This document shows positions 24,740 to 29,254 of a stretch of DNA of 64,000 nucleotides, in pieces. The first letter of the stretch is position 1. Every line of letters begins with the position of its first letter. Source of the DNA: Isurus oxyrinchus (taxonomy: Eukaryota); contig JANJGN010000336.1 of the NCBI GenBank assembly GCA_026770705.1, forward strand, positions 310,001 through 374,000. The letters are read 5' to 3'. The position numbers were made by a program, and so were the translations under genes. The notes beneath the pieces were generated by a model. It searched no databases. It saw only the letters and a program-made list of their open reading frames with translations, and was not told the DNA's origin.

Positions 24740-24753
24740 ACTTTCACTTTAGA
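24740..24753. repeat. TSD of the palindromic Penelope insertion (second copy at 28782-28795)
   Basis: ACTTTCACTTTAGA occurs as a direct repeat immediately outside both element termini. Confidence 0.9.
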
Positions 24754-26950
24754 ACAAAAACAGAATTACCTGGAAAAACTCAGCAGGTCCGGCAGCATCG
24801 GCGGAGAAGAAAAGAGTTGACGTTTCGAGTCCTCAAGACCCTTCAACAGAACTTGAGTTCGAGTCCAAGAAAGAGTTGAAATATAAGCTGGTTTAAGGTG
24901 TGTGTGTGGGGGGCGGAGAGATAGAGAGAGAGAGAGAGAGAGGTTGGGGTTGGGGGGGGATGTGGCTGTGTAGACAAACAAGCAGTGATAGAAGCAGATC
25001 ATCCAAAGATGTCAACGACAATGGTACAATAGAACACATAGGTGTTAAAGTTAAAGTTGGTGATATTATCTAAACGAATGTGCTAATTAAGAATGGATGG
25101 TAGGGCACTCAAGGTATAGCTCTAGTGGGGTTTTTTTTATATATAATAGAAATAGGTGGGAAAAGGAAAATCTTTATAATTTATTGGGAAAAAAAGGAAG
25201 GGGGAAACAGAAAGGGTGTGGGGATGGGGGAGTGAGCTCACAACCTAAAGTTGTTGAATTCAATATTCAGTCCGGAAGGCAGTAAGGTGCCCAGTCGGAA
25301 GATGAGCTGTTGTTCCTCCAGTTTGCGTTGGGCTTCACTGGAACAATGCAGCAAGCCAAGGACAGACATGTGGGCAAGAGAGCAGGGTGGAGTGTTAAAA
25401 TGGCAAGCGACAGGGAGGTTTGGGACATTCTTGTGGACAGACCGCAGGTGTTCTGCAAAGCGGTCGCCCAGTTTACGTTTGGTCTCTCCAATGTAGAGGA
25501 GACCACATTGGGAGCAACGAATGCAGTAGACTAAGTTGGGGGAAATGCAAGTGAAATGCTGCTTCACTTGAAAGGAGTGTTTGGGCCCTTGGACGGTGAG
25601 GAGAGAGGAAGTGAAGGGGCAGTTGTTACATCTTTTGCGTGGGCATGGGGTGGTGCCATAGGAGGGGGTTGAAGAGTAGGGGGTGATGGAGGAGTGGACC
25701 AGGGTGTCCCGGAGGGAGTGATCCCTACGGAATGCCGATAAGGGGGGTGAAGGGAAGATGTGTTTGGTGGTGGCATCATGCTGGAGTTGGCGGAAATGGC
25801 GAAGGATGATCCTTTGAATGCGGAGGCTGGTGGGGTGATAAGTGAGGACAAGGGGGACCCTATCATGTTTCTGGGAGGGAGGAGAAGGCGTGAGGGCGGA
25901 TGCGCGGGAGATGGGCCGGACACGGTTGAGGGCCCTGTCAACGACCGTGGGTGGAAAACCTCGGTTAAGGAAGAAGGAGGACATGTCAGAGGAACTGTTT
26001 TTGAATGTAGCATCATCGGAACAGATGCGACGGAGGCGAAGGAACTGGGAGAATGGGATGGAGTCCTTACAGGAAGCGGGGTGTGAGGAGCTGTAGTCGA
26101 GGTAGCTGTGGGAGTCAGTGGGTTTGTAATGGATATTGGTGGACAGTCTATCACCAGAGATCGAGACAGAGAGGTCAAGGAAGGGAAGGGAAGTGTCAGA
26201 GATGGACCACGTGAAAATGATGGAGGGGTGGAGATTGGAAGCAAAATTAATAAATTTTTCCAAGTCCCAATGAGAGCATGAAGCGGCACCGAAGTAATCA
26301 TCGATGTACCGGAGAAAGAGTTGTGGAAGGGGGCCGGAGTAGGACTGGAACAAGGAATGTTCCACATACCCCATAAAGAGACAGACATAGCTGGGGCCCA
26401 TGCGGGTACCCATAGCCACACCTTTTATTTGGAGGAAGTGAGAGGAGTTGAAGGAGAAATTGTTCAACGTGAGAACAAGTTCAGCTAGGCGGGGGAGAGT
26501 AGTGGTGGATGGGGATTGTTCGGGCCTCTGTTCGAGGAAGAAGCTAAGGGCCCTCAGACCATCCTGGTGGGGGATAGAGGTGTAGAGGGATTGGACGTCC
26601 ATGGTGAAGAGGAAGCGGTTGGGGCCATGGAACTGGAAATTGTTGATGTGACGTAAGGTGTCAGAGGAATCACGGATGTAGGTGGGAAGGGACTGGACAA
26701 GGGGAGAGAGAAGGGAATCAAGATAACGAGAGATGAGTTCTGTGGGGCAGGAGCAAGCTGAGACGATCGGTCTACCAGGGCAGTTCTGTTTGTGGATTTT
26801 GGGTAGGAGATAGAAGCGGGCCGTCCGAGGTTGGGCGACTATCAGGTTGGAAGCTGTGGGAGGGAGATCCCCAGAGGAGATGAGGTCAGTGACAGTCCTA
26901 GAAACAATGGCTTGATGTTCAGTGGTGGGGTCATGGTCCAGGGAGAGGTA
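24754..26950 (-). mobile_element. Penelope-like element, left arm (5'-truncated; RT plus GIY-YIG frame open from 26950 to 25238)
   Basis: RT motifs FLFTMDVQSLYT, KGVAMG and YIDDYF; GIY-YIG region LVYCIRCSQCGLLYIGETKRKLGDRFAEH. Confidence 0.95.
24815..24853 (-). ncRNA. Minimal type-I hammerhead-like motif (variant core CUGUUGA)
   Basis: AGTT-CTGTTGA-A-GGGTC-TTGAG-GACTC-GAAACGTC-AACT: stem I, stem II and palindromic ACGU, as in PLE minimal hammerheads; A6 is replaced by U. Confidence 0.6.
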
Positions 26951-28781
26951 CTTTAGCTTCTTCCTCGAACAGAGGCCCGAACAATCCCCATCCACCACTA
27001 CTCTCCTCCGTCTGGCTGAACTTGTTCTCACACTGAACAATTTCTCCTTCAACTCCTCTCACTTCCTCCAAATAAAAGGTGTGGCTATGGGTACCCACAT
27101 GGGCCCCAGCTATGCCTGTCTCTTTATGGGGTATGTGGAACATTCCTTGTTGCAGTCCTACCCCGGCCCCCTTCCACAACTCTTTCTCCGGTACATTGAT
27201 GATTACTTCGGTGCCGCTTCATGCTCTCGTCGGGACTTGGAAAAATTTATTAATTTTGCTTCCAATCTCCACCCCTCCATCATTTTCACGTGGTCCATCT
27301 CTGACACTTCCCTTCCCTTCCTTGACCTCTCTGTCTCAATCTCTGGTGATAGACTGTCCACCAATATCCATTACAAACTCACCGACTCCCACAGCTACCT
27401 CGACTACAGCTCCTCACACCCCGCTTCCTGTAAGGACTCCATCCCATTCTCCCAGTTCCTTCACCTCCGTCGCATCTGTTCCGATGATGCTACCTTCAAA
27501 AACAGTTCCTCTGACATGTCCTCCTTCTTCCTTATCTGAGGTTTTCCACCCATGGTCGTTGACAGGGCCCTCAACCGTGTCCAGCCCATCTCCCGCGCAT
27601 CCGCCCTCACGCCTTCTCCTCCCTCCCAGAAACATGATAGGGTTAGCCTTGTCCTCACTTATCACCCCACCAGCCTCCGCATTCAAAGGATCATCCTCCG
27701 CCATTTCCGCCAACTCCAGCATGATGCCACCACCAAACAGATCTTCCCTTCACCCCCCTTATCGGCATTCCGTAGGGATCACTCCCTCCGGGACACCCTG
27801 GTCCACTCCTCCATCACCCCCTACTCCTCAACCACCTACTATGGCACCACTCCATGCCCACGCAAAAGATGTAACACCTGCCCCTTCACTTCCTCTCTCC
27901 TCACCGTCCAAGGGCCCAAACACTCCTTTCAAGTGAAGCAGTATTTCACTTGCTTTTCCCCCAACTTGGTCTACTGCATTCGTTGCTCTCAATGTGGTCT
28001 CCTCTACATTGGAGAGACCAAACGTAAACTGGGCGACCGCTTTGCAGAACACCTGCGGTCTGTCCGCAAGAATGACCCAAACCTCCCTGTCGCTTGCCAT
28101 TTTAACACTCCACCCTGCTCTCTTGCCCACATGTCTGTCCTTGGCTTGCTGCATTGTTCCAGTGAAGCCCAACGCAAACTGGAGGAACAACAGCTCATCT
28201 TCCGACTGGGCACCTTACTGCCTTCCGGACTGAATATTGAATTCAACAACTTTAGGTTGTGAGCTCACTCCCCCATCACCACCCCCTTTCTGTTTCCCCC
28301 TTCCTTTTTTTCCCAATAAATTATAAAGATTTTCCTTTTCCCACCTATTTCTATTATATAAAAAAAAACCCCACTAGAGCTATACCTTGAGTGCCCTACC
28401 ATCCATTCTTAATTAGCACATTCGTTTAGATAATATCACCAACTTTAACTTTAACACCTATGTGTTCTATTGTACCATTGTCGTTGACATCTTTTGATGA
28501 TCTGCTTCTATCACTGCTTGTTTGTCCACACAGCCACATCCCCCCCCACAACCCCAACCTCTCTCTCTCTCTCTCTATCTCTCCGCCCCCCAACACACAC
28601 ACCTTAAACCAGCTTATATTTCAACTCTTTCTTGGACTCGAACTCAAGTTCTGTCGAAGGGTCATGAGGACTCGAAACGTCAACTCTTTTCTTCTCCGCT
28701 GATGCTGCCGGACCTGCTGAGTTTTTCCAGGTAATTCTGTTTTTGTTTTGGATTTCCAGCATCCGCAGTTTTTTTGTTTTT
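26951..28781 (+). mobile_element. Penelope-like element, right arm (inverted, further 5'-truncated, in-frame TGA at 27537-27539)
   Basis: Reverse complement of 24754-26549 with scattered substitutions (CGA->TGA), plus an extra ~34-nt T-rich 3' terminus. Confidence 0.95.
28647..28685 (+). ncRNA. Minimal type-I hammerhead-like motif (variant core CUGUCGA)
   Basis: AGTT-CTGTCGA-A-GGGTC-ATGAG-GACTC-GAAACGTC-AACT. Confidence 0.6.
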
Positions 28782-29254
28782 ACTTTCACTTTAGACCCTT
28801 CCACATTATTTTCACTGAGCTCTCGCTTAAAGTATTTTACTATCAACCTCTTCTCACCAGCAAATGACTAATTTAATGCACTAACATTTACCTATCTCTG
28901 GGCCAGGATGGCCGATTATCTTCCATGACGGACATCAGTGGGCCAGAGGGGTTTTTATGCTAATTTATTGTAGTTTCATTATCAACATGTTGTCGTTTTC
29001 AGAGGATAAACGTGGATGATGCTTGGCAGCATTTACTCTAAAGATTATGTAACTCTGACCGGTGGATCGACTAGCTTCATTACTTACAGACAATGTTTTA
29101 GCACTTTTATAAAGCATGACCCAGAGTTGATCAATGAGACTATTTGATAGCATGGACAGTTGGTTTTCGGCCAATCACAATTTTGAATTAACTCTCCAAA
29201 TTTGCCAATTCTCAATGATGTTTACAAATAATCAATTATTTCAGCTATCTTGGT

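What the first reader, a model, noticed from the sequence alone, without database searches (positions are those of the whole stretch)
24740..28795. 4-kb palindromic double Penelope element inserted as a single unit with a 13-14 bp TSD
Two 5'-truncated copies are fused head-to-head at 26950/26951 with their 3' tails pointing outward. This gives ~1.8-kb inverted arms (24754-26549 / 26951-28746) around a 401-nt loop. ACTTTCACTTTAGA flanks both ends, arguing for one integration event. The arms differ by about a dozen substitutions in the first 300 nt I compared, many at CpG, and the left arm keeps ~570 open codons including RT and GIY-YIG. Inverted arrangements are known for PLEs. A structure with a 3' end at both target junctions suggests priming from both nicked target strands (inference).
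Basis: partly seen in the sequence, partly recalled or inferred. Interest (0 to 1): 0.7.

Follow-up and report, generated by a model that had tools for sequence, protein, structure and literature searches.

The report
Head-to-head double Penelope-like retroelement insertion
Two shortened copies of a Penelope-like jumping gene sit head-to-head inside an intron of a shark-type IgM antibody gene, flanked as one unit by a 14-base target duplication; the structure is real, but it is the textbook way these elements insert.

Summary
Arms 24753-26547 and 26953-28747 are inverted copies: 1792 aligned nt, 44 substitutions, 4 small indels, 97.5% identity. They surround a 405-nt loop that continues the left copy in sense. 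The 14-mer ACTTTCACTTTAGA abuts both outer ends; none of 20,000 random placements gave 13 nt or more. The left copy keeps a 570-codon frame with RT and GIY-YIG domains. The right copy has one in-frame stop.

The right copy carries a 34-nt 3' extension (28748-28781) that the left copy lacks. Two other small loci of this family in the window are also head-to-head pairs with the extension on one arm only.

All of this matches published Penelope-like element (PLE) anatomy: an inverted 5'-truncated copy, a one-sided 30-40-bp "tail" and a TSD (PMC8557442, PMC3846280). A purified PLE protein cleaves and extends both target strands in vitro and starts reverse transcription at two sites that bracket the tail (PMC11167929).

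The main rival is two sequential hits, because the central joint reads ACTTT, the first 5 nt of the 14-mer.

The scan holds related unchecked notes on this genome, including two on this same stretch. I built no consensus and repaired no frame.

The parts
24740..24753 (.). Left copy of the target-site duplication ACTTTCACTTTAGA. The last A could also belong to the element, so the TSD is 12-14 bp.
24754..26950 (-). Left PLE copy, sense on the minus strand. It is 5'-truncated at 26950. Its 3' end is of the 'tail-less' class and lacks the terminal 34 nt.
   Evidence: Other copies read on past 26950 with a shared sequence (loose ends in 26-31 contigs per run), which shows the copy is cut short there.
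25238..26950 (-). Open frame of 570 codons plus stop. It holds RVT_1, a C-x4-C-xx-C linker motif and a GIY-YIG domain with two Cys between GIY and YIG. The N-terminal part of the protein and a start codon are missing.
26548..26952 (-). 405-nt spacer of the palindrome. It is the extra 5' part of the left copy (the start of the RT domain) and has no partner in the right arm.
26950..26954 (.). Central head-to-head joint. A (last base of the left copy), then CT (unassigned), then TT (first bases of the right copy) together read ACTTT, the first 5 nt of the 14-mer. There is no palindrome or self-complementarity at the joint.
26953..28781 (+). Right PLE copy, sense on the plus strand, 5'-truncated at 26953, with the full 3' end including the tail.
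27537..27539 (+). The only in-frame stop codon in the right copy's reading frame.
   Evidence: Frames 26922-27539 and 27552-28262 share one phase, and there is no indel between the arms in the coding part.
28748..28781 (+). 34-nt 3' extension ('tail') present on the right arm only. It lies between two similar T-rich motifs that end at 28749 and 28781/2.
28782..28795 (.). Right copy of the target-site duplication. The first A could also be the element's last base.
55682..55929 (.). Second head-to-head pair of the same family. The left arm (55694-55812, minus) has the full tail. The right arm (about 55824-55917, plus) lacks it. About 11 nt of filler lie between, and the pair is flanked by a 10-12-bp repeat CACTGTAATAGA inside a satellite.
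32254..32455 (.). Third, older head-to-head pair of a related subfamily. The left arm (32254-32393, minus) has the tail. The right arm (32386-32455, plus) ends at the tail-less site. No clear TSD.

Best explanation
This is one integration event of a Penelope-like element (PLE) of Neptune/Nematis type. The element's GIY-YIG nuclease nicked the two target strands 13-14 bp apart. Each freed 3' end then primed reverse transcription of element RNA.

1. The bottom-strand end started at the outer RT start site. It copied 1.83 kb and gave the right arm, with the 34-nt tail.
2. The top-strand end started at the inner start site, 33-34 nt upstream. It copied 2.2 kb and gave the left arm, without the tail.
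3. The two cDNAs, growing towards each other, were joined at their 3' ends with no homology (2 nt of filler). Each was then completed on the other, leaving two 5'-truncated copies head-to-head inside one TSD.
4. The arms have since drifted apart by 2.5%.

What is shown: the anatomy, the TSD, the two classes of 3' end, and recurrence of the form. What is inferred: the order of steps, the use of two RNA units (two molecules, or two units of a tandem transcript), and the joining step.
For: Element identity. RT and GIY-YIG lie in one frame.

Anatomy. The arms and loop are as described. The abutting 14-bp repeat was not matched in 20,000 random placements.

Both ends are family 3' ends. Contigs of other copies end at 28782/28774 and at 28749. 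The left arm ends within 2 nt of the second class.

Neither arm can be a copy of the other. The left arm has 405 nt more on the inside, and the right arm has 34 nt more on the outside.

Recurrence. All 3 loci of this family in the window are (-,+) pairs with the tail on exactly one arm. If ends were drawn independently at 81:19, the chance of this is about 0.03. Many head-to-head tail/tail joints from elsewhere in the genome appear in three runs (table 5).

Possible empty site. Contigs about 95% similar to the flanks, from two runs labelled as a second organism, stop matching exactly at 24753 and start exactly at 28782. This is what an empty site with a single 14-mer would give (records 20 and 15).

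Literature. An inverted 5'-truncated copy with a one-sided 30-40-bp tail and a TSD is typical of PLEs (PMC8557442; PMC3846280). A PLE protein cleaves and extends both strands, and uses two RT start sites that bracket the tail with no homology to the target (PMC11167929). Here microhomology at each end is at most 1 nt.
Against: The central joint reads ACTTT, the first 5 nt of the 14-mer. That would be expected if the right copy had its own 5-bp TSD, meaning a second hit.

The in vitro work used a Poseidon-clade element from a lizard, whereas this one carries the Neptune/Nematis linker motif.

The letters of the putative empty-site contigs were not shown, so the empty site is only hinted at.

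No contig bridging the central joint was listed, so the inversion rests on the assembly plus the divergence of the arms.

The arms are no closer to each other (97.5%) than to many other copies: 50,454 contigs were at least 99% alike. Identity therefore cannot show a common template.

In one of the three pairs (32254-32455) the longer arm is the one with the tail, so no fixed link exists between arm length and tail.
Confidence: 0.7

Rival explanations
1. Two sequential insertions. The left copy inserted first as a plain 5'-truncated copy with a 14-bp TSD. Later a second copy, in the opposite direction, hit the right-hand TSD copy right at the first copy's 5' joint and made its own 5-bp TSD (ACTTT). 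The regenerated target sequence may have attracted the nuclease again.
For: ACTTT at 26950-26954 equals 28782-28786, so the right copy is flanked by a direct 5-mer. The chance of such a match under the one-event model is roughly 0.1-2%. PLE proteins are reported to nick near their own copies (PMC11167929). An unchecked note of this scan (s1-300813) speaks of two Penelope insertions about 13 bp apart at a paralogous site.
Against: Three of the 5 bases are already explained as the last base of the left copy and the first two of the right copy. A random second hit within a given 14 bp is very rare, yet all 3 loci in this window are head-to-head pairs. The one-tail-per-pair pattern is not expected from independent hits. 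The literature treats the whole unit as one insert with one TSD, and confirmed this with an empty site in a rotifer (PMC3846280).
Confidence: 0.12
2. Self-priming (snap-back). One strand, either a cDNA or an antisense transcript as proposed for rotifer PLEs, folded back on itself. It was copied into its own complement and gave a hairpin that was then integrated.
For: This was proposed for head-to-head PLE repeats that have palindromes at the joint (PMC3846280). Some joints from elsewhere in the genome are perfectly symmetric, for example 24852 to 28648.
Against: In this copy neither arm is contained in the other: 405 nt extra on the inside of the left arm, and 34 nt of authentic tail extra on the outside of the right arm. 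A fold-back copy of the left arm could not have gained the tail, and a fold-back of the right arm would put the loop in the other orientation. The joint has no palindrome and no complementarity, and it has 2 filler nt. Both outer ends sit at family RT-start positions next to a TSD.
Confidence: 0.08
3. Not an integration product. Either the assembly folded a single copy into a false palindrome, or a later inverted duplication or a retro-copy of an already palindromic master created it.
For: PLE repeats are known to upset assemblies (PMC8557442). Gaps of N lie 500 nt to the right. No listed contig bridges 26950/26953.
Against: The arms differ at 44 sites and 4 indels, with private changes on both (tail sites polarised by eye against 55694-55926). 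A fold-back artefact would give identical arms. The inverted repeat stops exactly at the element's ends and does not include flanking DNA. The tail is one-sided and a TSD flanks the unit. A contig in run X1 bridges the left flank into the element (24669-24780).
Confidence: 0.05

Closest known systems
Canonical EN+ Penelope-like elements with an adjacent inverted 5'-truncated copy and an optional one-sided 30-40-bp tail (Arkhipova 2006 as cited; Arkhipova et al. 2013 PMC3846280; Craig et al. 2021 PMC8557442)
   Same: RT and C-terminal GIY-YIG in one frame. Heavy 5' truncation. Head-to-head inverted copies forming terminal inverted repeats. A single TSD around the whole unit. A 34-nt extension at one end only.
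   Different: Both copies are long (1.8 and 2.2 kb) and both are truncated. No full-length copy and no direct pseudo-LTR (pLTR) are present. Rfam detects no hammerhead. The host is a cartilaginous fish and the site is an IgM intron.
PAc (Poseidon of Anolis carolinensis) in vitro integration system (Frangieh et al. 2024, PMC11167929)
   Same: Both target strands are cut and extended. There are two RT start sites tens of nt apart that define the tail. There is no homology between target and start site; here it is at most 1 nt.
   Different: The clade differs: this element has the C-x4-C-xx-C linker that Poseidon lacks. The start sites here lie in T-rich motifs, not an AC-rich stem-loop. The target is not the ATT motif reported. 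The joined double product itself was not described in the text I read.
L1 twin priming (5' inversion of LINE-1 insertions; from my own knowledge, not checked in a paper here)
   Same: The second nicked strand also primes reverse transcription. The two cDNAs meet and are joined inside one TSD.
   Different: In L1 the inverted piece comes from a more 5' part of the same RNA and does not overlap the 3' piece. Here the two arms cover the same 1.79 kb and both start in the 3' terminal region, so two template units are needed.

Membership tests
Penelope-like elements, EN+ (C-terminal GIY-YIG) | Single ORF with a reverse transcriptase followed by a GIY-YIG endonuclease | tested here: met
   RVT_1 E 4e-7 (30.3 bits, cut-off 29.6) and GIY-YIG in the left frame. 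GIY-YIG scores 26.2 bits (cut-off 22.6) in the right frame. Atlas neighbours all carry HTH_animal, most with RVT_1 and several with GIY-YIG. 1096 relatives at E<=1e-50.
Penelope-like elements, EN+ (C-terminal GIY-YIG) | CCHH motif with two cysteines between GIY and YIG (PMC8557442) | tested here: met
   Read by eye in the translation: cysteines lie between the VY and YIGET motifs, and two histidines follow within 20 residues. No alignment to reference PLE nucleases was made.
Penelope-like elements, EN+ (C-terminal GIY-YIG) | [quoted passage not shown] | tested here: met
   34 nt at 28748-28781 on the right arm only. The same one-sided pattern holds in the two other loci. Two classes of 3' end appear in contigs of other copies.
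Penelope-like elements, EN+ (C-terminal GIY-YIG) | Variable-length TSD around the whole, possibly inverted, unit | tested here: met
   12-14 bp at 24740-53 and 28782-95. 10-12 bp around the pair at 55694-55917.
Penelope-like elements, EN+ (C-terminal GIY-YIG) | Pseudo-LTRs from partial tandem copies | tested here: not met
   No direct repeat of element sequence in 23500-30000. Both copies are 5'-truncated, so this copy cannot show it. The published figure legend says all variants occur.
Penelope-like elements, EN+ (C-terminal GIY-YIG) | Hammerhead ribozyme motif in the pLTR | tested here: inconclusive
   No Rfam hammerhead at E<=1 over 24000-29500 or at E<=10 over 28560-28800. A hammerhead-like string with a non-canonical core is visible near 28651-28681, but no activity can be claimed.
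Neptune/Nematis clades of PLEs | Extra CX2-5CxxC motif in the linker before GIY-YIG, absent in Penelope/Poseidon (PMC8557442) | tested here: met
   C-x4-C-xx-C is read by eye about 40 residues before the GIY-YIG core in the translation. Clade placement by RT phylogeny was not done.
L1-type twin-priming inversion | Inverted and direct segments are non-overlapping parts of one RNA | tested here: not met
   The arms overlap over 1792 nt.
Snap-back / fold-back hairpin copy | One arm is wholly a complement of the other, with base pairing at the turn | tested here: not met
   405 nt extra inside the left arm and 34 nt extra outside the right arm. No complementarity and 2 filler nt at the joint.

The most novel reading that the evidence does not exclude
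The ACTTT at the central joint may be a real 5-bp inner target duplication made within the same event. On this reading, one dimeric element complex first copied one RNA from the top strand and began to seal it onto the opposite overhang. It then used the bottom-strand end to copy a second RNA. Nested 14-bp and 5-bp duplications, plus one tail per pair, would then record the order of steps in PLE integration, which is still unknown.
Probability: 0.1. Interest if true: 0.5.

Novelty: already known. Interest (0 to 1): 0.25.

Why it matters
This is a clean natural example of what the 2024 in vitro work implies. Both target strands were used as primers, and each of the two reverse-transcription start sites was used once. 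Long arms and an intact TSD make the anatomy unambiguous. It shows that the behaviour seen with a lizard Poseidon protein also fits a Neptune/Nematis-type element in a cartilaginous fish.

For the host, a 1.8-kb inverted repeat now sits about 300 nt upstream of the first constant exon of an IgM cluster. There it could form a long hairpin in the pre-mRNA or the DNA. Beyond that it is ordinary repeat biology.

Tried and rejected
- Rfam, two searches: no hammerhead or any other family in the element.
- RNA fold of the last 183 nt: not more stable than shuffles, z -0.63. I make no claim of a 3' structure.
- Paralogous flanks or an empty site inside the window: none.
- Raw reads of a third organism (X20): only 3 reads laid, so uninformative.
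- Word-based protein search, to fetch same-family copies: the best hits are only 50-68% identical (whale shark, bamboo shark, stingray and many invertebrates), so no same-family loci came from it.
- Snap-back and L1-type twin priming were considered and rejected on anatomy.
- The lower divergence in the outer 670 nt (9 differences) than in the inner 1120 nt (35 differences) was considered as a sign of two templates or of conversion. It is left open, because CpG density also differs between the two parts.
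Full report
**What is there.**
- Between 24740 and 28795 lie two inverted copies of one repeat. The repeat finder reports three collinear inverted blocks of 1428, 232 and 161 nt at 96-98% complementarity.
- A gapped alignment pairs 26547-24753 with 26953-28747. It covers 1792 nt, with 44 substitutions (29 transitions, 14 at CpG sites) and four 1-2-nt indels in the G-run, GA-repeat and T-run stretches.
- GC skew flips sign at the centre, as expected for a palindrome.
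- The 405 nt between the arms (26548-26952) are not foreign. The minus-strand frame runs through them. The RVT_1 match of the left copy starts at profile position 9, whereas the right copy's match covers only positions 106-161. The spacer is therefore the extra 5' part of the left copy.
- Contigs of other family members read on past 26950 with a shared sequence (26-31 contigs per run, agreement 0.69-0.84). The left copy is therefore cut short there.
- Two nt (26951-26952) belong to neither copy.

**What kind of element.**
- The left copy keeps 570 open codons with RVT_1 and GIY-YIG.
- The right copy is in the same phase, with one in-frame stop at 27537-27539.
- Read by eye in the translation, two cysteines lie between the GIY-like and YIG motifs. 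A C-x4-C-xx-C motif sits in the linker before them.
- According to PMC8557442, the first feature marks PLE nucleases in general. The second marks Neptune/Nematis and is absent in Penelope/Poseidon.
- Atlas neighbours and 1096 word-search relatives have the same HTH_animal/RVT_1/GIY-YIG make-up. The nearest named ones are from whale shark, bamboo shark and a stingray, at 65-68% identity.
- Rfam finds no hammerhead.

**The ends.**
- ACTTTCACTTTAGA occurs at 24740-24753 and 28782-28795 and nowhere else in the window.
- On the left it abuts the arm directly. On the right it abuts a further 34 nt (28748-28781) that the left arm lacks.
- Those 34 nt are real family sequence. They recur, next to the same upstream sequence, at 55695-55728 and 32255-32290.
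- When the repeat is required to abut both ends, 0 of 20,000 random placements reached 13 nt.
- One base at each end could belong to either the element or the target, so the TSD is 12-14 bp.

**Two classes of 3' end.**
- Contigs from three runs were laid on the stretch. Copies elsewhere in the genome run into unrelated flanks at two places. One is 28782 (118-145 contigs per run), together with 28774 (107-128), which I read as a T-run length variant. The other is 28749 (49 and 54 contigs in X15 and X1; no such row was among those shown for X7).
- The two ends lie 33 nt apart, each just after a similar T-rich motif.
- The right arm uses the outer end. The left arm ends within 2 nt of the inner one.

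**Recurrence.**
- The window holds three loci of this tail family. Each is a (-,+) pair, that is, head-to-head with tails outward. Each has the 34-nt extension on exactly one arm.
- The pair at 55694-55917 is flanked by a 10-12-bp repeat inside a satellite.
- With 81% full and 19% short ends drawn independently, one tail per pair in three of three loci has a chance of about 0.03.
- The reads tool also lists many joints that link the reverse-complemented tail (24779-24854) to the forward tail (28646-28705) in two or three runs. These are short head-to-head pairs elsewhere in the genome (table 5).

**Hint of an empty site.**
- One contig about 95% similar to the left flank matches through 24753 and then carries 10 unmatched letters.
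- Another starts matching at 28782 after 6 unmatched letters (records 20 and 15).
- Both come from runs labelled as a second organism.
- Both include the 14-mer and break at its inner edges, as an empty site would. Their letters were not shown, so this is only a hint.
- A contig in run X1 bridges the left flank into the element with 5 differences and a depth of several copies. This suggests that paralogous clusters share the insertion.

**Context.** C1-set domains lie at 18.1-18.6, 19.0-19.4, 22.8-23.3 and 23.9-24.5 kb, and a V-set domain at 35.7-35.9 kb, all on the minus strand. This is one IgM cluster of the cartilaginous-fish type. The element lies between V and the first constant exon, about 300 nt upstream of that exon, most likely in the J-C intron (inference).

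**Mechanism.**
- Neither arm can be a copy of the other, because the left arm has more on the inside and the right arm has more on the outside. This excludes a simple fold-back for this locus.
- The arms overlap fully, which excludes L1-type twin priming on one RNA.
- Both ends are normal family 3' ends next to one TSD, with at most 1 nt of homology to the target.
- The simplest reading is two target-primed reverse transcriptions, one from each nicked strand and each from its own template unit, joined end to end.

**Comparison with the literature.**
- PMC3846280 describes the same layout with 8-10-bp TSDs and an empty-site proof. It calls head-to-head the most frequent inverted form and proposes self-priming on an antisense template.
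- PMC11167929 shows that a purified PLE protein cleaves and extends both strands. It also shows that RT starts at two adjacent internal sites not homologous to the target, and that the tail is the sequence between them.

**What stays open.**
- The central joint reads ACTTT, the first 5 nt of the 14-mer. This would also fit a second, later insertion into the right TSD copy with its own 5-bp TSD, or a re-nicking within one event.
- Three of the five bases are already explained by the two copies. A random second hit is very unlikely given three pairs in 64 kb. I therefore rate sequential insertion at about 0.12.
- Arm identity cannot settle whether one or two templates were used, because many other copies are at least 99% alike over short contigs.

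**Age (rough inference from my own knowledge of slow shark substitution rates, not tested).** A divergence of 2.5% between the arms implies on the order of ten million years or more.

**Limits.**
- The single reads call listed only a small part of its rows.

Noticed in passing
window 26950-26954: The central joint reads ACTTT, identical to the first 5 nt of the flanking 14-mer. It may be chance or a second, inner target duplication.
   Followed up: partly
window 28651-28681 and mirror 24819-24849: A hammerhead-like string: a CUGUCGA core variant, a 5-bp stem and GAAAC-GUC. Rfam does not score it at E<=10. Many head-to-head joints elsewhere in the genome start right at its 5' edge (28646-28656).
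   Followed up: partly
window 55694-55917: A mini head-to-head pair of the same family (arms of about 119 and 94 nt) inside a satellite with units of roughly 50 nt that fills 53-62 kb. It is flanked by a 10-12-bp repeat.
   Followed up: partly
window 32254-32455: An older head-to-head pair of a related subfamily in the same IgM intron. The 17-nt core of the tail (CTGCGGATGCTGGAAAT on the complementary strand) is identical in all three loci, although the rest has diverged by about 20%.
   Followed up: partly
window 29255-30020: A (GATA/GACA)n-type microsatellite with a 24-nt higher-order unit, broken by two N gaps (29291-29565 and 29841-30020), directly right of the element.
   Followed up: no
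window 23773-24008: Five copies of a 38-nt tandem repeat, apparently in the intron between the first and second constant exons of the IgM cluster.
   Followed up: no
window 14000-17100: A 3-kb tract rich in CA/TG and ACAC-type simple repeats, with an N gap at 14777-14934. It gives long spurious open frames on both strands.
   Followed up: no
window 24669-24780 (run X1 contig): A contig with 5 differences and several-fold depth bridges the left flank into the element. Paralogous IgM clusters may therefore carry the same insertion, which would date it before the cluster duplications.
   Followed up: no
window 20602-20913 and 45971-46345: Open frames that look like LINE-type reverse transcriptase fragments by eye. 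They have no Pfam hit at E<=0.01.
   Followed up: partly
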